Of a DNA stretch of 64,000 nt, positions 3,533 to 62,342 are shown piece by piece. The notes beneath the pieces were generated by a model, which did not search any database, had not been told where the DNA came from, and saw only the letters and a list, made by a program, of their open reading frames with translations. Position 1 is the stretch's first letter, and each line of letters starts with the position of its first letter. The DNA lies in sequence record MZ475893.1; one strand, 5' to 3'. The position numbers and the translations under genes were made by a program.

Positions 3533-6500
3533 TTACGCAGTACCTGAGCCTGGGGTAGAAGAACCATAGGTCAGTTTGAACGTATACGCCAGATTATCAA
3601 ACGGGAAGTCGTTGCGGTAAACAACATAGTCCACGCCGTTAATCTGAACTTCCGCAGGACCTGCAAAGTTGAAGTCGTCAAACTCCAACGCGCCATCCCA
3701 TGAACCAGCAAAGCCCTGTGCAGACTCCACGAAGTAACCGTAACCCAGAGACTTAGGCCACGCAACGTAGAAGAACACGTTGTTGCTACTTGTACTGGTG
3801 TTAGCAGGGCACGTCAGCGTCTGTTGACCGCTAAGCGTCAGCGCATTTTGCAGACCAGAAACGAACTGTGCATCGTAGTTCGTAACAGAGGTCACCTTAG
3901 TGCGATAGCCGAAGCGAGCACCCAGGTCAGCAACCTGCTCTTTCTTCAACGTCACGTCTTTGGTTGCAGTCTTGCTTACACCGTTCTTGGTATAAGTCAG
4001 AGTGATTGTGACAACAGCATCAGCAGTCACTTTGTCAGACTTGAGCAAGCCGCCTACAACGCTCAGGCCAGTAGCAGTACCAGACTTAACAGCAACAGAC
4101 CACACGCTACCGCTATCAGCAGTTACGTCAGGCGTGGTGCCATCAGACATAGTAGCAGTACCAGTGTACTGAGTGTTCACGCCGCCGATGATTGAATCAC
4201 TACCAGTGATAGTAACTGAATCAGGTGTCGCAGGAGCAGGCGTGTTCGTTACAGTCAGGTTCGCAGTTTGCGCTTGGCTGTTATACGAAGCAGTACCAAC
4301 GATGATCGTCTGTTGCGCGGACGTCACAGTGTTACCAACGATCTTGTCCGTGCCGTTAAACGTAAACGCAGTAGAGCTACCGCTTGAACGACTAACAACA
4401 GGAGTCAGGTCAACCGTGCTACCGCCAGAAAGAGTCAGACGCAGGACATAAGTACCGGTCTCACCTTTGTTGACAGCAGTTGGACCCACCAGCTCGCGCT
4501 TAGTGATGGTCTCAGCTTGGTTGATAATCTGAATCGTTTTCTCTGGCGTGTACGCAGTACCATCAACAGTGACGTTAGCAGCACGCAGCGTTGCGGTTTG
4601 GTTCTGGCTGATCGTGTTCGCAGGAACATTAACTTTCGTGCGGCTCGCGGTCGTACCAGACTGCAACTGAGCATACGCAGCACCCTGAGGCAGTGTCCAC
4701 GTTGGGTTAGTAGCGGTGTATTCTACCACAGTGCCGGACAGACGCGTCACACGCACATAGTATTCACCAGCAGTACCGCCCTCAGTGATTGAGTCAGGAC
4801 CTACAATGTCTACAGTGCTTACGGTGTCAGTCGGACCAGTTACAGTGAAGCTAACAGTACCAGTCTTCGTCACGCCGCCAACAGTTGCAGTAACGTTGAT
4901 AGTGAACGTCAGACTTCCGTAGAACCCGTTAAGAGCTTTCGTGGTACGAATGCGCCAGCCAGTTGTTCCGCCAGCAACGATCTCGAAATACTGAGCAGTC
5001 GCAGCAGGCAAGGTGTAGCTGAGTTCCGCACTTGTGCCTTCACGCGTAGAGTTATCGCTGAACGTCAGAGTGCTATGCAGGTCCTTCGCAGTCTGTGCAG
5101 CATCGTTAAATGCATACGCAGGTGTAGGAGCAGCAGGCTGAACCGACAGCAGACTGATAACGACCACGTTCTTGACCAACACGGATTTCTGTGCAGTCAA
5201 GCCACCAGCAGTCGCACGAATCAATGCAGTGCTATCCTGAGTTACTTCGCCAGCAGTCAACACACCCGTTTGAGCGATTGATGCGAACGCGCTACCCTGA
5301 ATAACTGACCACGTAGGTGAGGCCACCTGAACTTCACTTCCATCACTGTAGATTGACCATGCAGTGTATGGGCTGGTGGAGTTCTCGTTCATCTGGTCTG
5401 CGCCACGCACTTCCAGACTAACAACAGTCGGTGGATTACCAACGATTGATACAGGCAGCGTTGCAGTCTTCGTAATACCGTTTTCAGTATACGAGGCGTA
5501 GATGGTCACGCTAGACGTAGCGACAGGAACAGCACCAACAGTCAACGTTGAGTTATCGAATGTAGCGTACTGGTTAGTCGCTTGCAGACGGAACTCATTC
5601 GGGCTAACTGTTTCTGTATGACCATCAGAGTAAGTAGCGAGCACGGTGTAACCCGTCTGCGTCTTCTCTTGCACTGACGATGGACCGATAATCTGAATCT
5701 TCGTCAGGTCAACAACAGGCACCACATTGACGACAGTCAGATTGAGCGTAGCGTTGACCGTGTGAGTACCTTCTTTGTAAGAAGCGGACAGCACGACAGG
5801 AACGTCAGCAGTCACAGTACCAGCAGTAACGGTCTTGTTGACGATGGTCACAATATCCAGACGGTCAGCAGTAAACGTCAGAGGGTCAACGGTACGCGTG
5901 TGGCCATCAGAGTAAGTTGCGAGGAAAGTATAGTTCGCACTTTCGCCGCTGCGAATCGTGTTCGCACCCTGAATTGCCAGAGCAGTAACGAAGATCTCTT
6001 CTGCTTCATGGATGATTGTGATAGGCTTGGTGCCTGTAATCGTCTGCGAGCCTGACGTGTAACTTGCATTCAGCGTAACAGCGCGATCTTGTGCTGTCTC
6101 TTTGCGTGCAGTAACGACATTGGCATCGATAGCGGTGTAGGTAGCAGGAGACGCTGTGAATGAATTGGCAGTTACCATTTCAGTGTCACCGTTCGACCAA
6201 GTTACCTTGAACGTGTACGAGGCAGAAGCCTGCGACGCGATGGTATCTTGTCCGAGAATCTCCAGCTTAGTCATCACCTGCGCCTTGACTGTTACGTCTT
6301 TGGTTGCTGTGAAGTCTACGCCGTTATATGTGTACGTTGCAGTCAGAGTAGAAACGGTATCAGTCGCAACCTTCTGCGCAGTACCCACCAGACCAACAAG
6401 CGACAGCACATCCGTTTTAGATGAGGTGAAGTTGTTAGGCTGGACAGTTGCAACAGCGCCTGACTTATAGCGGGCAGTCACGCTGTAGGTTTCTTTCTGC

Positions 6501-7546
6501 TTATACAGCAGGCTGCTAGAACCAATGATGGCGATAGAGACCAGCTCATCATTTGGGATGAATGCGTTCTTGATCAGCAGGTCATAAGTAGCTGTTACCG
6601 TGTTGCCGTACACAGGGTCAATCTTGGTAGCAGTCACTTTGAGAACTACGTCAGCAGACAAATCAGGAGCGGTAACAGTACCGTCTTCTGAGATAGTCAC
6701 ACCGATAACGTTCTCTTGAATCGTCCACACAACGCCAGTAGGATTGTGCTCGATACGGTCGGACCATTCGGCGTCGATAGCCAGCTTAACGCTAGAGTTA
6801 TCCGACATGTACGAAGCTGAACCAGGCAGGCTGATACGCAGATTCATTAAGTGAGGAGATTCCCACTCAACGTTGTCTGATACAGGCTTAATCCACTTAC
6901 CAATGTACTTGTTCGCATTGGCTGGGTCCTGATCGACGATTGCCAGAACATAACCAGGCTGCGGTTGATTCGAAGAAGCTACCTCAACAAACGCTGAGGA
7001 GTTCAGACGAATCATCGTGCGAGGATAGTCTGGGTGATCGTGGTTGGTCGGATAACGTGGGTCTGACATACGTGGGTCAGAGCCAGATACCGCAATAGGG
7101 TCTTCTGCATCAGCAGGGTCCGTCTTCGTCTGCACACTACCGATACGATTCGTAGTAGCGTGAGGGATTTCGAGATCCCCTTCTTCGATGCCCAGGTCAC
7201 CAGCATTCTCCACAACGCGGCGGAAGAACTGCTTAGAGTTAAACAGCGAAGCGTAGTCAGGAACAGACACCCAAGAACCACGGTGGTTGCCGTCAGACAC
7301 ATGGCTGGTGCGGCGCAGCACATACTGATACTGTGGGCTGCCTGAGTTAGCATCAATCCAAATCAGATTGTATGGCTTCTCAGAGAATGACGGCTCTGTC
7401 AGCGACACTACAACTTGATACACATCGGTCTGATCGTTCGCATTGGGACGAAACAGGAACGTGATTGGGTTGCGTGGAGTCAGGCCGCGAGTACGGGCCA
7501 AAGCGATATACTGCTTGGCGAATCCGTCAATGGTGGTCACACTCAT
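3533..7546 (-). CDS. Ig-like (Big) repeat tail fibre/appendage protein
   Basis: 1337 aa; about 10 repeats of ~95 aa starting (L/V)xxLxIxGxxxI...YTxxATYSDG. Confidence 0.75.
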   Translation of the reverse strand: MSVTTIDGFAKQYIALARTRGLTPRNPITFLFRPNANDQTDVYQVVVSLTEPSFSEKPYNLIWIDANSGSPQYQYVLRRTSHVSDGNHRGSWVSVPDYASLFNSKQFFRRVVENAGDLGIEEGDLEIPHATTNRIGSVQTKTDPADAEDPIAVSGSDPRMSDPRYPTNHDHPDYPRTMIRLNSSAFVEVASSNQPQPGYVLAIVDQDPANANKYIGKWIKPVSDNVEWESPHLMNLRISLPGSASYMSDNSSVKLAIDAEWSDRIEHNPTGVVWTIQENVIGVTISEDGTVTAPDLSADVVLKVTATKIDPVYGNTVTATYDLLIKNAFIPNDELVSIAIIGSSSLLYKQKETYSVTARYKSGAVATVQPNNFTSSKTDVLSLVGLVGTAQKVATDTVSTLTATYTYNGVDFTATKDVTVKAQVMTKLEILGQDTIASQASASYTFKVTWSNGDTEMVTANSFTASPATYTAIDANVVTARKETAQDRAVTLNASYTSGSQTITGTKPITIIHEAEEIFVTALAIQGANTIRSGESANYTFLATYSDGHTRTVDPLTFTADRLDIVTIVNKTVTAGTVTADVPVVLSASYKEGTHTVNATLNLTVVNVVPVVDLTKIQIIGPSSVQEKTQTGYTVLATYSDGHTETVSPNEFRLQATNQYATFDNSTLTVGAVPVATSSVTIYASYTENGITKTATLPVSIVGNPPTVVSLEVRGADQMNENSTSPYTAWSIYSDGSEVQVASPTWSVIQGSAFASIAQTGVLTAGEVTQDSTALIRATAGGLTAQKSVLVKNVVVISLLSVQPAAPTPAYAFNDAAQTAKDLHSTLTFSDNSTREGTSAELSYTLPAATAQYFEIVAGGTTGWRIRTTKALNGFYGSLTFTINVTATVGGVTKTGTVSFTVTGPTDTVSTVDIVGPDSITEGGTAGEYYVRVTRLSGTVVEYTATNPTWTLPQGAAYAQLQSGTTASRTKVNVPANTISQNQTATLRAANVTVDGTAYTPEKTIQIINQAETITKRELVGPTAVNKGETGTYVLRLTLSGGSTVDLTPVVSRSSGSSTAFTFNGTDKIVGNTVTSAQQTIIVGTASYNSQAQTANLTVTNTPAPATPDSVTITGSDSIIGGVNTQYTGTATMSDGTTPDVTADSGSVWSVAVKSGTATGLSVVGGLLKSDKVTADAVVTITLTYTKNGVSKTATKDVTLKKEQVADLGARFGYRTKVTSVTNYDAQFVSGLQNALTLSGQQTLTCPANTSTSSNNVFFYVAWPKSLGYGYFVESAQGFAGSWDGALEFDDFNFAGPAEVQINGVDYVVYRNDFPFDNLAYTFKLTYGSSTPGSGTA

Positions 7547-13481: not shown

Positions 13482-14114
13482 TTAAAGAGATGAGGTCATT
13501 AAATCGAGAAGGTTTGAGACTACATGAGCAGGTCCGATTGAGATACCCGCTTGCACAGGCAGATGAACACGACGAGTAAACAACTCCATCGGGTCAGGGC
13601 CACCACCAGTTACTACGATACGAGGTATCTTTGGAAACATCTCAAGGATATCACGCAGTCTTTCAATCTTATAGCTGGTGCTGTCTATCGTCACGTTCGA
13701 TATGATCAGCATTGACGGTCGCTTGCTTTTGAGTTGTTCATAGTCGAAGCGATCACCATACAGCGTAACCCAACGCGGCTTCAAGGCTGTTGTCTCTGAA
13801 TCTTCAACAGCCGCATGGAAGATAGATAACGCTGCCATCTTCGCACGGTAGTCTGACGGGAAGCTACTGATAACCGTGATGCGTGGGTCAAGGCCAAACG
13901 GACTTTCAATCATCTTTGCAAGATGCGTCATCTGCTTGGTCTTTGAAAAAATCTTGCCTTTAAAATAAGGCGACATTGGCTTAAAGTCTTGCGAGGCTTC
14001 GACCACATCGAATGTCTCACGTTTGCCGAAAAGAAGCTGAGGGTCAACTCCCAGCGTCTGCATCTGCTTTGCTACTGCGGGTTCAAAGTCAAAAGTTAAC
14101 ACAATACCCTCCAT
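13482..14114 (-). CDS. Hypothetical protein, possibly a degenerate DnaC/IstB-like ATPase fold
   Basis: Start reassigned to MEGIV; MLIISNV (Walker B-like) and PRIVVT pattern; no intact Walker A. Confidence 0.45.
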   Translation of the reverse strand: MEGIVLTFDFEPAVAKQMQTLGVDPQLLFGKRETFDVVEASQDFKPMSPYFKGKIFSKTKQMTHLAKMIESPFGLDPRITVISSFPSDYRAKMAALSIFHAAVEDSETTALKPRWVTLYGDRFDYEQLKSKRPSMLIISNVTIDSTSYKIERLRDILEMFPKIPRIVVTGGGPDPMELFTRRVHLPVQAGISIGPAHVVSNLLDLMTSSL

Positions 14115-14130
14115 TGTTCTTATCGGGTAT

Positions 14131-14487
14131 TTACAGTTTCTGCGGCACACGCTGCCACACGGCGAACTTAACATTCAAGGCGCATTCTTCGAGTTCGGCC
14201 TCACGTCTAGGCTCATACTTAGGTGCATACTGTTGAAGGTGCTCAGGACGCTCTACGGCTGCAAGACTGAATACACGTATTGGGTTCGTCACCTGAGAGT
14301 ACGAATAGTCTTCAATGATAACAAGATTTTCGATTCGGAGAACACCAGGAACTTCAAACACTTCAGGCAAGGTGCAGGGTTCGATTACTGTCCCCATAAC
14401 CTTTTCTTGGTAGTCAACAAGTGCCTTAATTAAAGCGCGACCAACACTAGTAGACAGTGTAAGATTATACTCTGTACGGAATTCCAT
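14131..14487 (-). CDS. Hypothetical protein
   Basis: 118 aa, GAGGAG SD, operon packing. Confidence 0.7.
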   Translation of the reverse strand: MEFRTEYNLTLSTSVGRALIKALVDYQEKVMGTVIEPCTLPEVFEVPGVLRIENLVIIEDYSYSQVTNPIRVFSLAAVERPEHLQQYAPKYEPRREAELEECALNVKFAVWQRVPQKL

Positions 14488-19184: not shown

Positions 19185-19446
19185 TTTTGTCCTCTAAAAC
19201 AAATTGGAGAATACCCTCAATGTTTACAGCTTTCAGTTGCTGTCCTGTCTGCATTAACAGGCCATTGAGCACGCCGAGTAAATCAGCGCTGTGGCAATTG
19301 GGTGCAATCTGATGAACGAAAATATCGTCAGGGATATCACCAGGATTAAGCTGCCAAGCAGTACGCAAGGCAGCTCCCATGAATGACGGTCGTTCTACCA
19401 GTTGCTTGTTCAGAAACGAACAAACATCTTCGGCGCTCAACATCAT
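19162..19446 (-). CDS. Hypothetical protein
   Basis: 94 aa, coupled to polymerase stop. Confidence 0.65.
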   Translation of the reverse strand: MMLSAEDVCSFLNKQLVERPSFMGAALRTAWQLNPGDIPDDIFVHQIAPNCHSADLLGVLNGLLMQTGQQLKAVNIEGILQFVLEDKNEDLPTS

Positions 19447-22400
19447 TTCTTCGTAATCCTCTTGACTGCGTTCTTGAGGAGACTGCGGCTGATTTTGATT
19501 TTCTTCTTCGCATCACCAGCAGCTGCGGCAGCTTTCTTAGCCTTCTCTTCGGCTTCGTATGCTTCCCACTGCTTGATGTTCTTCGGAAGTTCTTTCTTCC
19601 ACAGATCGATGTTCTTCTGATCTTTCTTGGTCAGAGGATTCACTTTGCCCATAGAACGAATCTTGATGCCATTAGCCCACAGTTGCTTCTGCATCCACGT
19701 GGACATGAGATGGTACTGGTCTTCCATGATGCTATCAAGTTTCTTATCGACGTCGAGATCAGCTTCGCCCAACTCATCACGCTTCTGCTCAAGGCCAGCA
19801 CGAATATGCTTCCTGAGTTGTTCGTAAGAGAAGTCCCAACCTTCAACGTCTTTCTCTGATGCACCGATCTCAAAGTCGATCTCAGGCACAGACGTGAACT
19901 CAAACCCTGGATGACGCTTCTGTACAAGTTCGACCACTGCACTTGTCATGGCACGCTCAATCATATCAAGCGCGAGGAAAATCCAATCATAGTGACAGTC
20001 AACGGTCAAGGAGTCATGCACCGATACGTTCATATCAAAGTCAGGATAGACACCGTTTGCTTTCCAGTACTCAAACTTCATGCGGTCCAGAATACGAATC
20101 GCACTCATCATCAAGTCAGAACCAAAGCCCTGAACTGGACTGTTTACCGCACGACGGTTACATGCTGCATGAACCATGTTCGCGTCTTTGTGCGACTCAG
20201 GTAACATGAAGCCCCACAGGTAACGACGACGACCAACAGGTGATTCAACGAAGAAGTTCTGATGAGCAAAACTCTGAATCTTATCAAACCACTTCAAGCC
20301 AACAGGGAAGCGTTTAAGGAACTTGCCTTTGATCTCTTCGATCTCACCAACTTCACGTCCAGTTGACTTCGCAAGACCTTTGTTACCCTGCTGATAGATC
20401 AGGCCGAAGATTACTGTCTTAACCGCGTTACGTACGGACTTTGTTACGTCCATTACGTTTGGAATACCGAAGAAGTATGCGGCGTTAATCTTATGCACGT
20501 CACCTTCTGCTTCTACGCGGTGCTTAATCCACGGGTCAGGCACGGTACGATAACGATGACGCAACTCACGACCTTGTTCGAATACGTCTGCTACACCTTG
20601 GTCACCCGAGATGATTGACCAACCTCTAACTTCGTGCGCTGAGTAGTCGACCTTGATTAACAGGCGATTCTTACGCGCAATCAGAATACGTTTGATCAAC
20701 TTACCCATCTCGCTACGACTCGGAACCTGTTGCAAGTTCGGGTCAGATGCAGATGTACGACCTGTCACAACTTTTAGATAGCTGTACGTTGGTCGAATCG
20801 AACGGTCATGCTTGAAGTCCTCACTCTCGCCCCACAGCTTCAACAGGCTGTTAACGTAGGCGTTCTTGAGTTTGTACGCTTTACCTAACTTGGTATACAG
20901 CGAGACAAGAGGAAGTTCTTTGTACGCCTCTTGGAAGTCTTTATCGAGCTTCGCAGACTTCTTACCGTTATCACGTAGTTGCTCACCTTCCTTGAGAGGC
21001 TTTAAGCGCATCACATCGATGAACAGGATTTGCTTATGCTCCTGCTTCGACATATCGAACTTCGTGACCTCGACTTTGCCCATAAGACCCATCTTAGGAA
21101 CATTGTCGTCTCTGCATATCACGGCGTTCGCTGCTTTGACCTCAGGACTCGACATGAACTCGCGTTCAACGTTTCGAATCTCTTCATTGATTGGACTGTT
21201 TGGCAGGTTGAGCTTAAACAGGTAATCAATGTCGGCACCAGCGCCTGTTGTTTCCAAGACACTGAACGCATGAATCTGGTCGGAGATTTGCTCACCCACC
21301 AGCGATTCATACTTCGTGTACTTGCTATCGACGCCACGCTTAATCTGCGACAGATAGATACGGTACGGAACGATAACGTCAAGTCCCGCATACTCCTGCA
21401 CAGCTTCGTCAAGGTCAGAGTCGGCGATTGTCGCACGCATCTCCTTACCAAACGATACTTCATGATAAACAGTCGTGCCATACTGCATTGCGAGGTTGGC
21501 TAAGTTGTAATAACCTTGGCCAGTAACGGTCAACAGCGACTTCGCGTTCTCATCGTTACCAAACTCACCCGCTTGAATATCCCAGACGTCAGCGCAATAA
21601 CTGCGAATGCCAAAGTTGGAACGCATTACGTTCAGGTCAAACTTCGCATTCGTATAGATCTGAACCTTGTTATCGTTGTCTTCGAAGTAGTCACGGAACA
21701 TATCACTAATTCGACGCAACTCTTTACCGCTGAACGGACTGTCCCTGTGATAGATTGGAATCACATAGGCCGTCTCACCGTCGCACGACAACTGCACGGT
21801 CTGAATCTTGTTTTTGATTCGATTCAGGTTCTCGGTTTCTGTATCGACTGCGACCAGCTTAGCACGCTTCATCTTTTTCAAGATCTTTTCAAGCTGCTTA
21901 ACTTTGGTCACATACACCAGCTTCCAGTTACGGTCTTTACCGCAAGTCACTGGCTTAATCGCATAGCGCATACCCTTGTTGAGCCACGGCAACATCCAAC
22001 GTGCCATGTAACCCAGAGTATACGACGATGCGTTTATCACAGCAGGGTTCAGGACTGTGTGATAGCTAACGTTCGGCAGATGGATGAAGCTGTGCTTCTT
22101 GCCATCGTGCTTGAGCTTGGTGGGTATCTCAACTCCATACCAGTGCTCATAGTGTTCTTTTGAATACTGAATCCTTTCATTGTTGAGCGCCTTGAACGGA
22201 GCTTTACCAAAAGTCAGAACGTAGTCTGGCTTGTAGTCAACAATCAGATCACGAATACGATCAGCGAATGCTTGGTCAGCATCTTCCTTGTACTGCTCAG
22301 ACTTGTCATACGTCTTGAACATGTTGTAGCTAACAACGAGGAAGTTCCAATCGTCTAACGTGGTCTTTGTCGGGAACACGTCTTCGAGATACTGAATCTG

Positions 22401-22607
22401 ATTCAGGAACAAATCGCCTTCTGTGCTGCTAAAGATTTTACCATTACGCAGGTCATCAGTTGGCATGTGATCGAGGACAAGTAGTGCTTTACCGCCTTTG
22501 GCGCTTTTACTAACGCCTTTTAAAATACGAACCCCGTCATAAGTCTGCACGTCGGCAAACTGTTCAGGTGGATCGAAGTCAAGAGCAACGTGCTTGATTT
22601 TCACCAT
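19443..22607 (-). CDS. polA: Family A DNA polymerase with N-terminal UDG-like domain and 3'-5' exonuclease
   Basis: VAVDTET (ExoI), YTNAKFDL (ExoII), YAGLD (ExoIII), TGRTSASDPNLQQVP, DYSAHE (A), KTVIFGLIY (B), VHDS (C). Confidence 0.95.
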   Translation of the reverse strand: MVKIKHVALDFDPPEQFADVQTYDGVRILKGVSKSAKGGKALLVLDHMPTDDLRNGKIFSSTEGDLFLNQIQYLEDVFPTKTTLDDWNFLVVSYNMFKTYDKSEQYKEDADQAFADRIRDLIVDYKPDYVLTFGKAPFKALNNERIQYSKEHYEHWYGVEIPTKLKHDGKKHSFIHLPNVSYHTVLNPAVINASSYTLGYMARWMLPWLNKGMRYAIKPVTCGKDRNWKLVYVTKVKQLEKILKKMKRAKLVAVDTETENLNRIKNKIQTVQLSCDGETAYVIPIYHRDSPFSGKELRRISDMFRDYFEDNDNKVQIYTNAKFDLNVMRSNFGIRSYCADVWDIQAGEFGNDENAKSLLTVTGQGYYNLANLAMQYGTTVYHEVSFGKEMRATIADSDLDEAVQEYAGLDVIVPYRIYLSQIKRGVDSKYTKYESLVGEQISDQIHAFSVLETTGAGADIDYLFKLNLPNSPINEEIRNVEREFMSSPEVKAANAVICRDDNVPKMGLMGKVEVTKFDMSKQEHKQILFIDVMRLKPLKEGEQLRDNGKKSAKLDKDFQEAYKELPLVSLYTKLGKAYKLKNAYVNSLLKLWGESEDFKHDRSIRPTYSYLKVVTGRTSASDPNLQQVPSRSEMGKLIKRILIARKNRLLIKVDYSAHEVRGWSIISGDQGVADVFEQGRELRHRYRTVPDPWIKHRVEAEGDVHKINAAYFFGIPNVMDVTKSVRNAVKTVIFGLIYQQGNKGLAKSTGREVGEIEEIKGKFLKRFPVGLKWFDKIQSFAHQNFFVESPVGRRRYLWGFMLPESHKDANMVHAACNRRAVNSPVQGFGSDLMMSAIRILDRMKFEYWKANGVYPDFDMNVSVHDSLTVDCHYDWIFLALDMIERAMTSAVVELVQKRHPGFEFTSVPEIDFEIGASEKDVEGWDFSYEQLRKHIRAGLEQKRDELGEADLDVDKKLDSIMEDQYHLMSTWMQKQLWANGIKIRSMGKVNPLTKKDQKNIDLWKKELPKNIKQWEAYEAEEKAKKAAAAAGDAKKKIKISRSLLKNAVKRITKK

Positions 22608-56495: not shown

Positions 56496-56993
56496 TCAAT
56501 CAGGTTTATCCAGAATACGCGCTAACTCCCATTTGAGAAATTCTTCGTGCTCGTGGTCAGGACCTGCTTCGAAGTAAATATCAAAATGGTTGTCGTAGTT
56601 TTTCTGTGTAATAGAAATTAAAGGGTGACCACTCGGAAGATGTGATCTCAAATAATACGCTACGATAAAAACATCGTAGGTCTTTAGCTTTCGTGGGGCT
56701 GCGGCCTGTTCCAACATCTTTGCATAGAGCGCTTCATACTTCTCTTGGTACTTCTTCTTTTTATCAAAGAACTCCAAGAGATTAGCCACAACATGCCGCT
56801 TTTTCCTATAGGTAGAAGCCCCGATAAGATTTTCGACGGCGCTCACGAACTTTAAATCAGACATATCGGGCTTTAGTTTAATAAATTTTGCGTAATCATA
56901 TTGGTCACGCAGGACAACCTCCATTTTTGCAGCGATGCGCAAAATACGGTCGACGTTGGGCTGCTTCACTCTAGGCATAATAGAACTCAACAA
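56496..56993 (-). CDS. Hypothetical protein (paralog of 57012-57536; start may be 56978)
   Basis: ILRxA..LEV, L.xHLPSxHP(L/I), LxxELxRI motifs shared. Confidence 0.7.
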   Translation of the reverse strand: MLSSIMPRVKQPNVDRILRIAAKMEVVLRDQYDYAKFIKLKPDMSDLKFVSAVENLIGASTYRKKRHVVANLLEFFDKKKKYQEKYEALYAKMLEQAAAPRKLKTYDVFIVAYYLRSHLPSGHPLISITQKNYDNHFDIYFEAGPDHEHEEFLKWELARILDKPD

Positions 56994-57011
56994 TAGTGCA
57001 TGTTTACAGAA

Positions 57012-57536
57012 TCAATCGGCAGTAGACCCAATGCGCTCTAGTTCGTAGGTCAAGTAAGCATCCCATGAATAGAAGCCATCTTTAGCCAACACAGAATCAA
57101 ACTGTCGGCTGATCTTCGTACCTTTAGGAAAGCGAATGCGATCAGACAGACGTTGGAGTCTAGCGTAGGTCATCTCAACTTTCTTCACAATTGGGTGTGT
57201 GCTTGGTAAATGATTCTGCAGGAACTTGCAGCTAAAGATCAGCGGGAAGTCTTTGAGGAGTTCCACCGATTCTTTTTGCGCAGCCACCAGCCCGCTATAG
57301 TCATTCACCTGCTCATGGATTTCAGGATGAGCATAGTACCAATCGTCGAGAGACTCTAACCCAAGACGTTCTTCGTACATCATTGACTCGTACATTACCA
57401 TCAGTACGGGCTTCTCTTCCTTCTTATCCTTGAAAGCAACAAACAGTTTGGGATAAGTTCCAAACTTCTTTTCCATAAAGACTTCGAGGATTATCGCATA
57501 ACGAAGAATCTCAAATTCGGTTAGTACCTTGCTCAT
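57012..57536 (-). CDS. Hypothetical protein (paralog of 56496-56993)
   Basis: 174 aa, AAGG SD. Confidence 0.7.
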   Translation of the reverse strand: MSKVLTEFEILRYAIILEVFMEKKFGTYPKLFVAFKDKKEEKPVLMVMYESMMYEERLGLESLDDWYYAHPEIHEQVNDYSGLVAAQKESVELLKDFPLIFSCKFLQNHLPSTHPIVKKVEMTYARLQRLSDRIRFPKGTKISRQFDSVLAKDGFYSWDAYLTYELERIGSTAD

Positions 57537-57539
57537 ACC

Positions 57540-59144
57540 TTACTCCGAAATATCTTTGTCACAAAACTTTTTAGCAATGAACGTGGCATCGGTACTTTCA
57601 ATGCTGTCGCCCTCAACACAAAGTAAAGCACCATCGTGCTCAAGAGAATAAACGCCTTTGATATTCGGGCAATTGAGAATCGCATCGAACAGGTACTTAC
57701 TCTCCCAGCCGGCAAGCATGTGGTTTAGCACTCGGCGCCTTATCTTCTTATCACTTTCGCCTTCTTCTGGATCATAGTTAGAACCAGTGGCGCAAGTCAA
57801 CACGCCATACTCAGGACGCTTTGACTTTTTGTTTTTCCGAAACTGCTTTGCGTACTCATTAAGCAAATCTCGTATTGAGAAATAGAGCAACGATGTTCTG
57901 GTGTTCCAGTCCTCCATAGCAGTACGAACTTTATATTTCGGCATCGTCTTACGGAGTTCTTTGTAGACGTTGCTGTACGGGTTGATCTCCAATTGACCAG
58001 CGGAGAAGATGGTTGCATACAAACAAATCTTTGCCGTCTTCTTATCCATCTGAGATATACGAGCCATGTCCTCCACAGACTTAATATCGTCGAAGAATCC
58101 GTAGTCAATCGAATACGAGGCCAACTCGTTTCGTAACACATTGAACTGGCTGGACTTCATGTCCCAGTTAGTACCTACAGTAAAGCAGGCTTGTTTAAGA
58201 ATGCTCGGCAAGTTTTGAAAACCACCGCCGATTTCAAACAAGCGACCACCAATCTGAGACAGTCGGTATCGAGGCCAGTAGCGAATAGTTAACGGGTTAG
58301 TGTTAGCAATCTGCACAGGTCCAGAAACGATTGTGTCCAAGAGAGCTTTAACTTGCAAATATTGTTTCTTTGCTTTGTTGTTAGCAATCAAGGACTTCTC
58401 TTCAAGGTACTCAAGTATCGGTTCGATGTTAACCTCATTTGGCAGCATCTTGTCCAACACCTTGCGATACAGTAGCCTGCCCGTTAAACCTTTTCCGCGG
58501 TCCCTGTTTCTGTCGAGGGACTTGAGATCGTGCTGAGGTCTAACAAAAGGCAGCTTAGAATTTTTCTCTATCATGGACCACACAGTCACCCCATAGTCTT
58601 CTCGCAATATGCGCACAGGACTGTAGAAACGGACACGCTTTAGAATCTCCTGAGACGTGTGGTGCTTGATATGTTGGTACATCCCGTCAAGAATCTCCTG
58701 ACGTATGCGGAACTCTCTGCTAAGGCCCTTTTTCTTATCATAAGGTTTCGTCTCAAAGACGTTAACCATCAACCAGTCCAAGGATCTACTGAAAGTACCT
58801 TCTTTTTTAGCATACTTGCCGACAGCAACGCTATTTCCGCCTCTACGGAAGCCAAATACCATCGGCAGCTCTGTTTGACCTAAAATCTTAGGAAAAGGTA
58901 CCCATACACGGCCAAACTTCTTCTTTTTGTGTTTGCGCGACGGGTACAAGCTGCATTGAAGAATGTGCCAGAAGAAAAGATTCAATTGAGTACGAAACTC
59001 ACGCTCGGATTCCACAGGCCCCGTGTAAGGACATGCGTTTACCACGTTGCTTTTCACCCAAAGAACGACTTCTTTCTCCTGGTAGGAGGGGTTCTTTATC
59101 AGAACGGCCCCCTGACCGGAAACGATTCGTTTTTTCATACTCAC
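57540..59144 (-). CDS. Divergent family A-fold (PolA/TV-Pol/T7 RNAP-like) nucleic acid polymerase
   Basis: GGRLF....FQNLP, WDMKSSQ (A), KKTAKICLYATIFSAG (B), LNHMLAGWE, LEHDG (C); no exonuclease domain. Confidence 0.65.
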   Translation of the reverse strand: MSMKKRIVSGQGAVLIKNPSYQEKEVVLWVKSNVVNACPYTGPVESEREFRTQLNLFFWHILQCSLYPSRKHKKKKFGRVWVPFPKILGQTELPMVFGFRRGGNSVAVGKYAKKEGTFSRSLDWLMVNVFETKPYDKKKGLSREFRIRQEILDGMYQHIKHHTSQEILKRVRFYSPVRILREDYGVTVWSMIEKNSKLPFVRPQHDLKSLDRNRDRGKGLTGRLLYRKVLDKMLPNEVNIEPILEYLEEKSLIANNKAKKQYLQVKALLDTIVSGPVQIANTNPLTIRYWPRYRLSQIGGRLFEIGGGFQNLPSILKQACFTVGTNWDMKSSQFNVLRNELASYSIDYGFFDDIKSVEDMARISQMDKKTAKICLYATIFSAGQLEINPYSNVYKELRKTMPKYKVRTAMEDWNTRTSLLYFSIRDLLNEYAKQFRKNKKSKRPEYGVLTCATGSNYDPEEGESDKKIRRRVLNHMLAGWESKYLFDAILNCPNIKGVYSLEHDGALLCVEGDSIESTDATFIAKKFCDKDISE

Positions 59145-59208
59145 ATCGTGATTACCTGAGTTTTTCTATCTGATATTTACAGATTCAGACTTATCTTATG
59201 ACCCGTAC

Positions 59209-59519
59209 GCTACAGCGCTTGGTACGGCTACAGCTACTACAGCGGAGCTAGCGGGATACGCGCTTGGCTTGATCGAAACATGGAAGGAGAGGTACATCTT
59301 TAGGCGGCACGTTTTGTAGAGGCTGAATCCGAGAGATTAGCACTATCAATGCCCCTCCACCCATGCTGGAGCTGCTTAGAATAGCATTCTGTTAGGATAA
59401 TTTAGGTCGTCTAAACCGTGTAAATTTTCCCGAGAAAACAGACGATTTTCCGTAAAACACGCCCGTTTTCAGACAAAAACCAGAAAAATCTTAATAAAAT
59501 CAAGGACTTTTCCGAAAAC
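59209..59519. repeat. Non-coding region with CTACAGC repeats and phased TTTTC..AAAAC repeats
   Basis: CTACAGC at 59210, 59228, 59237; TTTTC(C) at 59425, 59446, 59466, 59508. Confidence 0.6.
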
Positions 59520-59530
59520 TACTCAGGAAA

Positions 59531-60190
59531 TCACTTCTTGCGAGAGATCTTTTGGTTCAATTTCTTACCGATTTGAGACAAAACGCGCTCGACTGTTTCA
59601 CCGTCACGTTCACCGATAGCCATAGCGAGCCTTTCGCCCTGTTCACGCGATAGCTCAGGCATAATCAGCTTGAGCATCTTTGATCGCGCCTTTGCAGACT
59701 TTGATTTGCCTTTTGACAGCGATTGCGTTTCCATTTCGGCAGCAACACGGCTCATTGTGCGCTGCACACGACGATCTGCGAATATATCACCGAAGATATT
59801 GCCAAACAGGTCTTGGAACGAACGTCCGCCACCAAATATCTCGTCCTTTGTGAAGCGCACTTCCTTTCCTAGCGCATTACGCTTAACGCTGTGCGTGCTT
59901 TCCACTTCGTTTTGGACGCGTGCACCTTCGATGAAGTTCTCATCAGGCCGCGATTTCTTACCTTCAGCACCGGGCTTAGTGACGCCGTTACGCAGCTCAG
60001 CACGCCCCTCAACAGCCGCATCAGGGTCAAACATGTCATCCGTGTTGACGCTCTGATTAGGGTCAAAGGGGATTTTGTCTGTCAGCTTGTTTTCATCTGG
60101 CCACGAACGAGGGATATCAGACGCCGGCTGAGGGCTGTTTGTCATATCACCGTTCTTCTCGCTGTTCAGACTCACATAAATCTTGGTCAT
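59531..60190 (-). CDS. Hypothetical protein (MTKIYVSLNS N-terminus)
   Basis: 219 aa, GGAG SD; basic C-terminus. Confidence 0.7.
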   Translation of the reverse strand: MTKIYVSLNSEKNGDMTNSPQPASDIPRSWPDENKLTDKIPFDPNQSVNTDDMFDPDAAVEGRAELRNGVTKPGAEGKKSRPDENFIEGARVQNEVESTHSVKRNALGKEVRFTKDEIFGGGRSFQDLFGNIFGDIFADRRVQRTMSRVAAEMETQSLSKGKSKSAKARSKMLKLIMPELSREQGERLAMAIGERDGETVERVLSQIGKKLNQKISRKK

Positions 60191-60199
60191 TTGTTTCTC

Positions 60200-61306
60200 C
60201 TAGAGAATTTTAAAGCCCTTGAAAATGTTATACGCGTATTCTTTGCGTTGTACTGCACGGGTGGTGCACACCCATTCCCATTGATCGTTCTTTGCTGTGC
60301 GCTTCTTCGGCGCTTCCATCACTTTCAGCACATAGTTTTTGAAAGGCAGAACCAGCAAATCTTCAGGCTCAAGCGGTCCGCAACGCGCAGGCAGAACAAC
60401 AGTCAGGTTACCTACAGTAAGTTCCTGATCGTAATCCAGCACGTTTGCTTCTTCGCTGATATTGCCTTTAACGTAAGGCACGCCCAGATCGAATATCATT
60501 GTGGCGTGTGTGAAAGCCTCAACGCCACCGATTCTGATCGTTACGTTCTTGCCACGAAACTTATCCAGCGTTTCCGCTTTCAACTCAACCGCTACGCCGT
60601 TCAGCATCAGCATAGGACGTGGGAAAGCAGGAAGCACTTTCTCATTCAATCTGACCGAATAAGTCGCCTGCGTAAAGTATTTTGGAATAAGCTGATCGAA
60701 CTCAACGAAGCCGTCTTTGCGTACCTGACGGAACGTTGAAGGGCTGGTGGACTGATCGTATGTGTAGCCTTCAATGCGTAGCGCATGGTGCTGCATCATA
60801 ACGTTGTATACGAAGCCTGTGCTAATGAATCCAGGCACGATGCCTTGACGGAAGCACACAGCACAGTTGGCGTTGTTACCACCATCCCATTTGACGCTCA
60901 TCTCTTCTTCGGTGTCGCCCATGAGATCTGCTGCGCTCAACGTTGCGTTCTCACCTTCGTCGAGGTCATCAAGGCTAACCGTTTGGCGTCCACCACCAAA
61001 CATGCCTTTCGACACAGTGTTCAGCTTGACGTTACCCTGAGTGCCGAGGCTTGAACGGCCAACGCTTTTCATTCCGCCTAAGTTGGAATCAAAGTCGTCG
61101 TTGACTGTTTTGTTGCAACTGCATGTCAGACCGAATTTTGCTTTCTTGAATATGATAATGTCCGTAGCATCGACGGCTAATGCCTGTTCTACTTTGGACT
61201 TGACCACTTCCTGAATGGAGTCAAGGCGCTGCTGCACTCGCTTTGTCTCGTAGGTCTTGTGGCGATCATATTTATTACGGGGTTTGCCACGTTCAATCCA
61301 GCTCAT
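60200..61306 (-). CDS. Putative neck/head-closure virion protein
   Basis: 368 aa; CxC...CxxCxxxG...GF pattern like neck proteins of large myophages; late-class motif upstream. Confidence 0.45.
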   Translation of the reverse strand: MSWIERGKPRNKYDRHKTYETKRVQQRLDSIQEVVKSKVEQALAVDATDIIIFKKAKFGLTCSCNKTVNDDFDSNLGGMKSVGRSSLGTQGNVKLNTVSKGMFGGGRQTVSLDDLDEGENATLSAADLMGDTEEEMSVKWDGGNNANCAVCFRQGIVPGFISTGFVYNVMMQHHALRIEGYTYDQSTSPSTFRQVRKDGFVEFDQLIPKYFTQATYSVRLNEKVLPAFPRPMLMLNGVAVELKAETLDKFRGKNVTIRIGGVEAFTHATMIFDLGVPYVKGNISEEANVLDYDQELTVGNLTVVLPARCGPLEPEDLLVLPFKNYVLKVMEAPKKRTAKNDQWEWVCTTRAVQRKEYAYNIFKGFKIL

Positions 61307-62298: not shown

Positions 62299-62342
62299 AT
62301 TCTGTAAATGATCTTACTTGGTTAACCTGTAGGATATTTGCG

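What the first reader, a model, noticed from the sequence alone, without database searches (positions are those of the whole stretch)
57540..59144. Second, minimal PolA-fold polymerase (TV-Pol/T7 RNAP-like) lacking an exonuclease
Seen: the 534-aa ORF carries the family A palm/finger motifs in the correct order. GGRLFEIGGGFQNLP matches PolA TGRLSS..PNLQNIP; WDMKSSQ is motif A with its Asp; KKTAKICLYATIFSAG resembles motif B (R..AK..NFG.IYG); LNHMLAGWE resembles N..IQG; and LEHDG is motif C with HD. There is no 3'-5' exonuclease domain and the ~280-aa basic N-terminus is unassigned. The phage already has a complete PolA at 19443-22607. Established: TV-Pol-type minimal superfamily A enzymes from mobile elements were proposed to act as primase-polymerases, and T7-type RNAPs share the fold. 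Inference: this is a dedicated origin-priming enzyme/replication initiator or a single-subunit RNA polymerase. It sits behind a CTGTAAATA promoter and directly beside a repeat array.
Basis: partly seen in the sequence, partly recalled or inferred. Interest (0 to 1): 0.8.

Follow-up and report, generated by a model that had tools for sequence, protein, structure and literature searches.

The report
Extra proofreading-free DNA polymerase in jumbo phage
This giant Erwinia phage, like about 60 relatives, carries an unannotated second polymerase of the DNA polymerase I superfamily: it has no proofreading domain, belongs to the little-studied 'TV-Pol' family of mobile elements, and probably helps start or repair phage DNA synthesis rather than make RNA.

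Summary
ORF 57540-59144 (minus strand, 534 aa; QYW03863 of Erwinia phage pEa_SNUABM_45) is real, intact and at the same position in about 59 phage records from Erwinia, Dickeya and Yersinia jumbo phages.

An AlphaFold model (pLDDT 83) matches only family A DNA polymerase domains among its top 50 solved-structure hits. There is no exonuclease domain.

Profile comparisons link the whole protein, including its basic N-terminal domain, to roughly 480-aa proteins on bacterial mobile elements beside resolvase or integrase genes. They also link it to a Ma-LMM01-type cyanophage protein. It is therefore a member of the TV-Pol family (Iyer 2008).

The phage already has PolA with exonuclease, a clamp, a clamp loader, a DnaG-type primase and helicases, so this enzyme is an addition. 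It shares a CTGTAAATA promoter class with replication and repair genes.

The RNA polymerase reading is disfavoured. A primase-polymerase role is plausible but untested. The "repeat array" is only three heptamers.

Verdict: new member of a known kind, of moderate interest.

The parts
57540..59144 (-). Gene for the 534-aa TV-Pol-family polymerase (QYW03863, pEaSNUABM45_00220). It starts at GTG 59144, or at ATG 59138 as in some relatives.
58500..59144 (-). N-terminal domain, residues 1-215. It is basic (pI 10.1) with conserved FFWHxLQ.S, WVPFP and G.SREFRI stretches. A helix-strand-strand element at residues 121-147 looks winged-helix-like. The domain is homologous to the N-terminal domain of the bacterial mobile-element relatives.
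   Evidence: (no significant fold match; the weak hits are mostly winged-helix proteins)
58305..58499 (-). Thumb region, residues 216-280. The helices 221-231, 241-252 and 256-273 precede the palm.
   Evidence: secondary structure; the boundary is my inference from the roughly 300 columns aligned to PolA
57543..58304 (-). Palm and fingers, residues 281-534. It contains a beta hairpin with R301 (codon 58242-58244); the GGGFQ motif with Q310; motif A D328 (58161-58163); motif B K368xxxK372 with Y376 and F380 (K372 = 58029-58031); G479-x-E481; and motif C H503-D504 (57633-57638).
   Evidence: codon positions checked
59174..59182 (-). CTGTAAATA promoter-like element, 30 nt upstream of the GTG start codon at 59144.
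59210..59243 (-). Three GCTGTAG heptamers just upstream of the promoter element. This is the only cluster of the heptamer in the window. Y3-like relatives carry 3-4 similar copies; other subclades carry different short repeats or none.
59145..59530 (.). The 386-nt non-coding region between the upstream 219-aa gene and the polymerase gene. Its length is conserved (about 390-510 nt) across all subclades. It contains conserved blocks: a terminator-like hairpin near 59480-59525, and an invariant TTACA(C/T)GG block near 59415-59440 that reads as an inverted, promoter-like copy on the plus strand.
   Evidence: (repeat I1)

Best explanation
The gene encodes a catalytically competent polymerase of the family A superfamily that lacks any exonuclease and belongs to the TV-Pol family. 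Its build is a basic N-terminal domain of about 215 aa (probably DNA-binding), a short helical thumb, a palm with the two metal-binding aspartates D328 and D504 plus the primer-terminus arginine R301, and a fingers helix with K368xxxK372, Y376 and F380.

Shown here: the fold, the conservation of the catalytic residues, homology over the full length to TV-Pol-type proteins on mobile elements, co-location with phage replication and recombination genes, and a promoter motif shared with them.

Inferred: it makes DNA rather than RNA by the usual two-metal, template-directed 5'-to-3' mechanism, without proofreading. It acts in phage DNA replication or recombination as an accessory to the PolA-clamp replisome. 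Its most likely role is a primase-polymerase that can start DNA chains on single-stranded template, as CCPol-MP does, with the basic N-terminal domain holding the template in place of a separate ssDNA-binding subunit. It may act at the conserved non-coding region next to the gene.
For: Fold:
- The AF2 model has pLDDT 83 and pTM 0.74.
- All of the top 50 PDB matches are family A DNA polymerase domains, with E down to 7e-6 over about 300 aligned columns.
- Viral-library matches include virophage and algal-virus replication proteins as well as phage PolAs.

Active site:
- D328, K372, G479, E481 and H503-D504-G505 are invariant in 89 sequences. R301 and Q310 are present in 88 of 89.

Family:
- A profile of the phage clade against a profile of the bacterial mobile-element cluster gives hhalign probability 99.9%, E 1.5e-35, over 422 columns that include the N-terminal domain.
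- Mobile-element members sit directly after a serine resolvase, or with an integrase and ParA. This is the context Iyer et al. described for TV-Pols that carry an N-terminal domain (PMC2579912).
- The broad profile matches the Ma-LMM01-type cyanophage protein at 99.8% probability, E 1e-28.

Replication context:
- The shared promoter motif precedes PolA, SbcD, the SbcC operon, the clamp loader and this gene. The shorter core CTGTAAA precedes the clamp gene.
- The gene lies next to a Holliday-junction resolvase and near a primase, an exonuclease and an SSB gene.
- In other phage lineages the homolog lies between a Rep helicase and RNase HI, or next to a 5'-3' exonuclease and a DHH-type protein.

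Precedent:
- CCPol-MP, counted as a TV-Pol, is a proven DNA primase that uses dNTPs (PMC7581432).

DNA rather than RNA:
- Sequence and fold are closer to PolA than to T7 RNAP.
- A bulky conserved Gln sits five residues after the motif A Asp.
Against: - No enzyme activity has been measured for this protein or for any TV-Pol that carries the N-terminal domain (PMC7581432 says none had been characterised by 2020).
- The phage has a canonical DnaG-type primase, so a second primase is not needed in any obvious way.
- No conserved small OB-fold partner is adjacent. The 174-aa downstream gene is found only in the 7 closest relatives.
- No D5-type helicase is linked to the gene.
- The gene diverges far faster than its neighbours and than PolA: 22% against 37-75% identity to pEa_SNUABM_5, while PolA is 83% identical to that of the related Yoloswag lineage. 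That is unusual for a core replisome part.
- The N-terminal domain has no significant structural match, so DNA binding is a guess from charge and shape.
- Sugar selectivity could not be settled. The alignment around motif A is uncertain, and the Glu steric gate and Tyr766 equivalent of PolA are both replaced, by Gln and by Phe or Met.
- GC skew does not single out the neighbouring region as an origin.
Confidence: 0.45

Rival explanations
1. It is a primer-dependent accessory DNA polymerase, not a primase. It would be a low-fidelity enzyme without proofreading, used for gap filling, lesion bypass, end joining or recombination-dependent replication, in the way Pol theta and Pol nu serve cells.
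For: - It has the same fold and catalytic residues as in the main explanation.
- Its promoter motif is shared with the SbcC and SbcD nuclease genes, and the gene lies next to a Holliday-junction resolvase.
- The phage already has a DnaG-type primase.
- The phage clade has replaced the Gln of the QG motif with Ala, Ser or Thr, and the Tyr766 equivalent with Phe. In Klenow those residues check the primer-terminal base pair. That role is my own knowledge and was not tested here.
- CCPol alone only extends primers.
Against: - The conserved N-terminal domain and the mobile-element relatives point to an initiator-type role.
- No repair-specific partner or domain was found.
- Nothing here distinguishes priming from extension.
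Confidence: 0.3
2. It is a conflict protein rather than a replisome part. On this reading the phage uses the polymerase activity in an arms race with the host or with competing elements, for example to copy or extend a specific nucleic acid. That would explain why the gene evolves fast.
For: - The gene is much more divergent than all of its neighbours and than PolA, while the catalytic residues stay fixed.
- Its relatives live on mobile elements that sit in defence-rich islands, next to an OLD-like nuclease or Cas genes.
- A conserved, possibly structured non-coding region lies beside the gene.
Against: - There is no hit in PADLOC for it, its relatives or its neighbours.
- No known counter-defence system uses a family A polymerase.
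- The promoter class and the gene neighbourhood are those of replication and repair genes.
- Fast evolution could equally reflect co-evolution with a DNA target site.
Confidence: 0.1
3. It is a very small single-subunit RNA polymerase that transcribes phage genes, possibly from the CTGTAAATA promoters.
For: - T7-type RNA polymerases share the fold.
- The phage has a short, strongly over-represented promoter motif unlike sigma-70 promoters.
- Motif C is HDG, without the Glu that follows the Asp in Klenow as I recall it, which resembles the HDS I recall for T7 RNAP. The phage's own PolA also has HDS.
Against: - No RNA polymerase appears in the top 50 fold matches in either library.
- hhalign to T7 RNAP aligns only 49 columns, outside the catalytic motifs.
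- There is a Gln where T7 RNAP has the Gly that admits the 2'-OH, and Phe or Met where it has Tyr639 (the T7 residues are from my own knowledge).
- At 534 aa, it has no room for the promoter-recognition and specificity-loop modules.
- The gene itself sits behind the motif.
- The PaBG paper reports sigma factors for phage PaBG and no RNAP catalytic subunit.
Confidence: 0.05
4. It is a relic of a mobile element that entered an ancestral phage and now has no catalytic role. It would be either inert or reduced to a DNA-binding regulator.
For: - Its closest non-phage relatives are on mobile elements.
- It evolves fast.
- Iyer et al. describe a TV-Pol element integrated in cyanophage Ma-LMM01.
Against: - The gene is intact, single-copy and in the same place in about 59 phage records spanning 22-100% identity.
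- All catalytic residues are invariant.
- It has its own conserved promoter.
- No recombinase gene is linked to it in the phages.
Confidence: 0.05

Closest known systems
TV-Pol family (Iyer, Abhiman & Aravind 2008), the subset with an N-terminal globular domain found on resolvase- or integrase-bearing mobile elements and in cyanophage Ma-LMM01
   Same: - It has the minimal family A core: thumb, Arg-bearing hairpin, palm with two Asp, and fingers with a basic-xxx-K motif.
- It has no nuclease domain.
- It carries the N-terminal domain.
- Profile-level homology covers the full length.
   Different: - It sits in a 264-kb lytic jumbo phage as a fixed, syntenic core gene, with no recombinase or D5 helicase beside it.
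- The phage has a full replisome of its own.
- The Gln of the QG motif is lost in the phage clade.
- The N-terminal domain in the model is mixed alpha/beta, not all-helical as predicted in 2008.
CCPol-MP primase of SCCmec and the PolA-SSB primases (Bebel 2020; Rice 2023)
   Same: It is an A-family polymerase domain without working proofreading, carried by a mobile genome and associated with replication. CCPol-MP provides the only biochemical precedent: a primase-polymerase that uses dNTPs.
   Different: - CCPol is close to Pol I and keeps the E710 and F762 equivalents. This protein has Gln and Tyr at the corresponding positions.
- CCPol needs a separate OB-fold partner and lies in an operon with a helicase. 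Here there is no conserved adjacent partner, and an N-terminal domain is fused instead.
Canonical PolA (Klenow, Taq, and the phage's own PolA at 19443-22607)
   Same: It shares the right-hand fold, the order of motifs A, B and C, and the TGR..QN.P pre-motif.
   Different: - It is not detectable by Pfam PF00476 or by HMMER against the PDB.
- It has no 3'-5' exonuclease.
- The Glu steric gate, Tyr766 and Glu883 equivalents are replaced.
- The hhalign match to a PolA profile is only marginal (P 0.0015).
TVpol-helicase replication proteins of virophages and polinton-like viruses (Sputnik V13, Zamilon)
   Same: There are structural matches to the Zamilon replication protein (E 7e-5) and to a Pyramimonas virus protein (E 7e-7).
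   Different: Those proteins are fused to a D5-type helicase and are the only replicative enzyme of a small genome. This protein stands alone and is an accessory.
T7-like single-subunit RNA polymerases
   Same: They share a distant common fold (established knowledge).
   Different: No fold or profile match was seen here. The protein is about 350 aa shorter, and the residues involved in sugar selection differ.

Membership tests
Family A polymerase superfamily (fold level) | Right-hand polymerase domain with thumb, palm and fingers that can be superposed on Klenow or Taq | tested here: met
   Foldseek top 50 PDB hits are all family A DNA polymerases, probability 1.0, E 7e-6 to 2e-3, 270-380 aligned columns for most.
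Family A polymerase superfamily (fold level) | Two catalytic Asp residues (motif A and motif C) and the motif B Lys | tested here: met
   D328, D504 and K372 are invariant in 89 sequences and align to the PolA motifs. Their spatial juxtaposition was not measured.
Canonical DNA polymerase I family (Pfam PF00476) | Recognised by the family HMM or by significant sequence similarity | tested here: not met
   No Pfam entry on record, no NCBIfam hit, and no PDB hit by phmmer or by profile. hhalign to a PolA profile gives only 17% probability, P 0.0015.
Canonical DNA polymerase I family (Pfam PF00476) | Glu steric gate (Klenow E710) and the motif B Tyr (Y766) | tested here: not met
   Five residues after the motif A Asp there is Gln (82 of 89). 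The Y766-equivalent column is Phe (39), Met (37) or Tyr (8). The motif A register is uncertain by up to 2 residues.
TV-Pol family | Minimal core without any fused or linked nuclease: bi-helical thumb, hairpin with an invariant Arg, two Asp, and fingers with R/KxxxK | tested here: met
   R301 is present in 88 of 89 sequences. K368xxxK372 is present, with K372 invariant and position 368 variable (K 20, R 10, V 32 of 89; basic in most of the close phage clade). Helices 241-273 form the thumb. No nuclease domain was found.
TV-Pol family | Conserved Asp in the fingers module (Iyer 2008) | tested here: inconclusive
   An Asp three residues before K372 occurs in 41 of 89 sequences, mainly in the mobile-element cluster, but not in the phage clade. 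I could not see which column Iyer's figure refers to.
TV-Pol family | Sequence homology to accepted members | tested here: met
   A1 against the mobile-element cluster A3 gives 99.9%, E 1.5e-35. A2 against MaMV-DC ORF27L (genus Fukuivirus, like Ma-LMM01) gives 99.8%, E 1e-28. A1 alone against that protein gives 63%, E 7e-5. Caveat: the exact proteins in Iyer's Figure 2 could not be fetched, and orthology of ORF27L to the Ma-LMM01 TV-Pol is inferred.
TV-Pol family | Genomic association with a D5-like helicase, or with a resolvase, integrase or transposase on a mobile element | tested here: not met
   This holds for the bacterial relatives: a resolvase directly upstream in 2 contigs, and an integrase plus ParA in another. 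It does not hold for the phage gene itself, which has no recombinase or helicase adjacent in pEa_SNUABM_45, JA11 or pEa_SNUABM_5.
PolA-SSB (CCPol-MP type) primases | Adjacent small OB-fold ssDNA-binding partner and a helicase in the same operon | tested here: not met
   The downstream 174-aa gene is conserved only in 7 close relatives, and the 165-aa gene in none. Neither has a PHROG or PADLOC hit. Their folds were not predicted. There is no helicase in the operon.
PolA-SSB (CCPol-MP type) primases | De novo DNA primer synthesis | not testable with these tools
   This needs biochemistry.
T7-like single-subunit RNA polymerases | Fold or profile similarity to T7 RNAP that includes the catalytic motifs, and NTP-selecting residues (the Gly542 and Tyr639 equivalents) | tested here: not met
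   No RNAP appears among the top 50 fold hits. hhalign aligns only 49 columns, in the N-terminal part of T7 RNAP. The protein has Gln and Phe/Met at the two positions.

The most novel reading that the evidence does not exclude
The polymerase and the conserved 390-510-nt non-coding region just upstream of it form a linked initiator-origin pair. On this reading the fast-evolving basic N-terminal domain recognises lineage-specific short repeats there (GCTGTAG in this phage), and the enzyme lays down a DNA primer de novo to start jumbo-phage replication. That would make it the first TV-Pol with an N-terminal domain to have a defined biological role, and a sequence-specific A-family primase acting in a lytic phage.
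Probability: 0.15. Interest if true: 0.75.

Novelty: new member of a known kind. Interest (0 to 1): 0.5.

Why it matters
The TV-Pol family was defined by computation in 2008. Only one atypical member, CCPol with its partner MP, has been tested, and the form with the N-terminal domain has never been studied biochemically.

This analysis shows that about 59 sequenced jumbo phage records from Erwinia, Dickeya and Yersinia phages keep such an enzyme as a fixed gene. In every record it is annotated as hypothetical, or wrongly as a helicase. It sits beside a complete PolA, clamp and DnaG-primase replisome.

That provides a culturable lytic system in which to ask two questions: what these minimal A-family polymerases do, and how an A-family active site might start chains.

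It also corrects the gene inventory of this phage clade, which has two polymerases of the PolA superfamily rather than one. In addition, it identifies a promoter class (CTGTAAATA) that marks the replication and repair regulon.

Tried and rejected
- **Sequence searches with no result.** PHROGs returned only an unnamed family. NCBIfam, PADLOC and the PDB, by single sequence and by two profiles, found nothing useful.
- **hhalign to PolA.** Against a single PolA sequence the alignment was collinear but not significant. A 24-sequence PolA profile gave only P 0.0015, so the family A assignment rests mainly on the fold search.
- **N-terminal domain.** I modelled it separately (pLDDT 74) and searched it against the PDB. 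Nothing scored below E 0.5, so 'winged helix' remains an impression.
- **Small partner protein.** I looked for an MP- or SSB-like partner next to the gene. The downstream genes are not conserved.
- **Resolvase linkage.** I looked for it in 19 bacterial loci by tblastn and found it in only one. Two metagenome contigs do show it.
- **Intergenic region 59145-59530.** There is no Rfam family, no tRNA and no tandem repeat. RNAalifold gives a weak structure with a few compensatory pairs, which is not enough to call an RNA.
- **GC skew as an origin marker.** It follows gene orientation and reaches its minimum about 8 kb away.
- **A2 scan of genomes.** A2 was too diverse for the genome scan, so I used the sub-alignment A3 instead.
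- **Sugar selectivity.** It could not be decided from sequence, because the register between the motif A Asp and the following helix is uncertain.
Full report
**What the window is.** Positions 57000-59600 are identical to Erwinia phage pEa_SNUABM_45 (MZ475893, 263.9 kb). This is a jumbo myovirus of the group that includes Y3, Dickeya AD1, Alexandra, the JA phages and Yoloswag. The finding concerns ORF 57540-59144 on the minus strand, 534 aa, annotated as a hypothetical protein.

**Checking the observation.**
- The ORF is intact and has 21 close homologs of 36-100% identity, all 523-551 aa.
- tblastn finds it once, at the same map position (mostly about 172-187 kb of the record), in 43 Erwinia, Dickeya and Yersinia phage records.
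- A more divergent version lies at the same position in 16 further records of the Yoloswag/pEa_SNUABM_5 type.
They remain so in an alignment of 89 diverse relatives. D328, K372, G479, E481, H503, D504 and G505 are invariant. Y293, G300, R301, G308, Q310, K317, N326 and Q333 are at least 90% conserved.
- Ordinary sequence methods see nothing. There is only an unnamed PHROG, no NCBIfam or Pfam hit, and no PDB hit with the single sequence or with profiles.

**Fold.**
- An AlphaFold model built on the 21-sequence alignment is confident: pLDDT 83, pTM 0.74.
- Against the PDB, all top 50 Foldseek matches are polymerase domains of family A DNA polymerases. They include M. smegmatis Pol1, Klenow, Taq, Bst, the apicoplast polymerase, Pol theta and DpoZ, with probability 1.0, E from 7e-6, and about 300 aligned columns.
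- In the viral library, the clade's own homologs come first. After them come a Pyramimonas virus 'origin-binding' protein, many phage PolAs, and the Zamilon virophage replication protein.
- The secondary structure agrees with the palm layout. D328 ends strand 325-329 and is followed by a helix, and H503-D504 lie at the turn of hairpin 495-510.
- hhalign against the phage's own PolA gives a collinear alignment of the TGR..QN.P pre-motif, motif B, the QG motif and motif C. Statistical support is only modest, with P 0.0015 against a PolA profile.
- T7 RNA polymerase gives no alignment of the catalytic region.
- I could not measure the distance between the two aspartates.

**Family.**
- A profile search of 1.8 billion representative proteins finds 378 relatives with E up to 1e-3. 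These fall into a phage cluster of 38, which includes this protein, and a larger cluster of 107 proteins of about 480-500 aa.
- Members of the larger cluster occur in cyanobacteria, Bacteroidota, Rhodothermales, myxobacteria and other bacteria.
- Where context is available, they lie on mobile elements. One sits directly after a serine resolvase in two contigs, and another sits with an integrase and a ParA.
- The two clusters are homologous over the full length, including the N-terminal domain: hhalign 99.9%, E 1.5e-35, 422 columns. They share FxHxLxS, WVPxP and G.(S/C)REF stretches.
- A member of the larger cluster also hits the Ma-LMM01-type Microcystis phages by tblastn. The broad profile matches MaMV-DC ORF27L at 99.8%, E 1e-28.
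- These features are those of the TV-Pol family of Iyer, Abhiman and Aravind (PMC2579912). Specifically, they fit the subset that has an N-terminal globular domain and is linked to resolvases, integrases or transposases. Ma-LMM01 is named there as a host of such an element.
- I therefore file the protein as a TV-Pol. The caveats are that I could not fetch the exact sequences of the 2008 paper, and that the phage gene lacks the recombinase or helicase neighbour typical of the family.

**What else the phage has.**
- The window and its flank encode a PolA with a 3'-5' exonuclease domain (PF01612 plus PF00476), a sliding clamp, a clamp loader, a 1944-aa helicase and a second helicase.
- They also encode SbcC- and SbcD-like nucleases, a Holliday-junction resolvase and a DnaG-type primase. 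An SSB and a further exonuclease lie nearby in the relative JA11.
- The TV-Pol is therefore an extra enzyme, not the only polymerase or primase.
- The PaBG paper names RNAP-related genes only for phage PaBG of this wider group. It lists sigma-70-like factors and no RNA polymerase catalytic subunit, and it groups the clade's sigma homologs together (PMC7412058).

**Regulation and neighbourhood.**
- CTGTAAATA occurs 7 times in the window, always on the minus strand, against 0.45 expected by chance. It lies 25-45 nt upstream of start codons, often just after a terminator hairpin.
- The genes it precedes are PolA, a 230-aa 'DNA polymerase' PHROG member, SbcD, the SbcC operon, the clamp loader, one unassigned gene and the TV-Pol. 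The shorter core CTGTAAA also precedes the clamp gene.
- The core is present upstream of the TV-Pol gene in all 17 related loci from IMG/VR.
- The gene order is kept throughout the clade, in this sequence: Holliday-junction resolvase, 368-aa gene, 219-aa gene, a long intergenic region, TV-Pol, variable small genes, then a 324-aa peptidase-like gene.
- In other phage lineages, the homolog lies between a Rep helicase and RNase HI (Vibrio phage GR7B), or next to a 5'-3' exonuclease and a DHH-type protein.

**Mechanism.**
- The invariant residues argue for an active enzyme using the usual two-metal chemistry. D328 and D504 would bind the metals, R301 and Q310 would contact the primer terminus, and K372 would contact the incoming triphosphate.
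- Several features point to DNA rather than RNA synthesis. The protein is closer to PolA than to T7 RNAP. A bulky conserved Gln lies five residues after the motif A Asp. The one characterised relative, CCPol, prefers dNTPs. This remains an inference.
- The primase-polymerase role is inferred from three things: the family's context-based prediction, the CCPol-MP precedent, and the fused basic N-terminal domain (pI 10.1) that could hold single-stranded template.
- Against that role, the phage has DnaG and there is no conserved partner protein.
- In addition, the gene evolves much faster than its neighbours. It is 22% identical to the pEa_SNUABM_5 homolog, against 37-75% for the neighbours, and PolA is 83% identical to that of the related Yoloswag lineage.
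- The phage clade has also lost the Gln of the QG motif, and has Phe in place of the Tyr766 equivalent. That would fit a low-fidelity accessory polymerase equally well. I give the rival explanations their own probabilities.

**The neighbouring non-coding region.**
- The claimed repeat array is not a tandem array. It contains three GCTGTAG heptamers at 59210-59243, the only cluster of this word in the window. Y3-like relatives have 3-4 such copies, and other subclades have different short repeats or none.
- The 386-nt region as a whole is conserved in length (390-510 nt) across all subclades and has conserved sequence blocks. One block is an inverted, promoter-like copy on the other strand (repeat I1).
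- RNAalifold finds a weak structure with a few compensatory pairs. Rfam finds nothing.
- GC skew does not mark the region as an origin.
- An initiator-origin pair is the most novel reading still open, and I rate it at about 15%.

**Novelty.**
- I found no paper that links TV-Pols with jumbo phages. The 2021 comparative overview of jumbo phage replication systems does not mention one.
- All database records call the gene hypothetical. The exception is pEa_SNUABM_5, where it is called a helicase. In JA11, the annotated start truncates an intact ORF.
- The protein is a new, unannotated member of a known but barely studied family, so the interest is moderate.

Noticed in passing
window 14128, 22647, 39275, 40650, 49369, 52529, 59174 (minus strand); shorter core at 19223 and at 62302 (plus strand): CTGTAAATA marks a promoter class. 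It sits in front of replication and repair genes: PolA, a 230-aa 'DNA polymerase' PHROG member, SbcD, the SbcC operon, the clamp loader and the TV-Pol, with the shorter core before the clamp gene. It often follows a terminator hairpin directly. It has no sigma-70-like -35 element and resembles T4 late promoters in form. Which factor reads it is unknown.
   Followed up: partly
window 59145-59530: The non-coding region upstream of the polymerase gene is conserved in length (390-510 nt) across all subclades, including pEa_SNUABM_5. It has invariant sequence blocks, an inverted promoter-like copy at about 59417-59438 on the plus strand, three GCTGTAG heptamers, and a weak consensus fold with a few compensatory pairs. 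No Rfam family matches. It could be a regulatory region, a small RNA or an origin.
   Followed up: partly
window 57540-59144 compared with L047, L036 and L041: The polymerase gene diverges far faster than its neighbours: 22% against 37-75% identity to pEa_SNUABM_5, and 45% against 69-91% to Alexandra. The replicative PolA stays 83% identical to that of Yoloswag, yet the catalytic residues of the TV-Pol never change.
   Followed up: partly
window 13482-14174 (minus strand): A 230-aa ORF matches PHROG 20094, labelled 'DNA polymerase', at E 1e-89 but has no PDB sequence match. A CTGTAAATA lies inside the listed ORF at 14128-14136, so the true start is probably downstream of it. What this protein is remains open.
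   Followed up: partly
L002 15001-16635 (Dickeya phage JA11) and L047 6025-7692 (pEa_SNUABM_5): These are database annotation errors. JA11_200 is annotated as 405 aa, but the ORF is intact at about 553 aa. The pEa_SNUABM_5 homolog is labelled 'putative helicase'.
   Followed up: yes
window 57012-57536 and 56496-56993 (minus strand): Two small genes directly downstream (174 and 165 aa) share a short HLPS(T/G)HP stretch (BLASTP E 3e-5). They have no family match. Only the closest relatives (174 aa) or none (165 aa) have them, so this slot between the polymerase and the peptidase-like gene is variable.
   Followed up: partly
window 60200-61306 and 59531-60190 (minus strand): The two genes upstream of the intergenic region (368 and 219 aa; PHROGs 21298 and 31583, function unknown) are kept in every subclade and always precede the polymerase gene. 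The 368-aa protein has Cys pairs suggestive of a zinc site.
   Followed up: no
window 3533-7546 (minus strand): A 1337-aa tail-protein homolog has a weak match to an HNH endonuclease PHROG (E 1e-9) over its first 125 residues.
   Followed up: no
L005 588-4902 and L044 1-8314 (bacterial relatives): Bacterial TV-Pol relatives sit in islands that also carry an OLD-like nuclease or Cas3/Cas6 genes. The elements seem to lodge in defence-rich regions.
   Followed up: no
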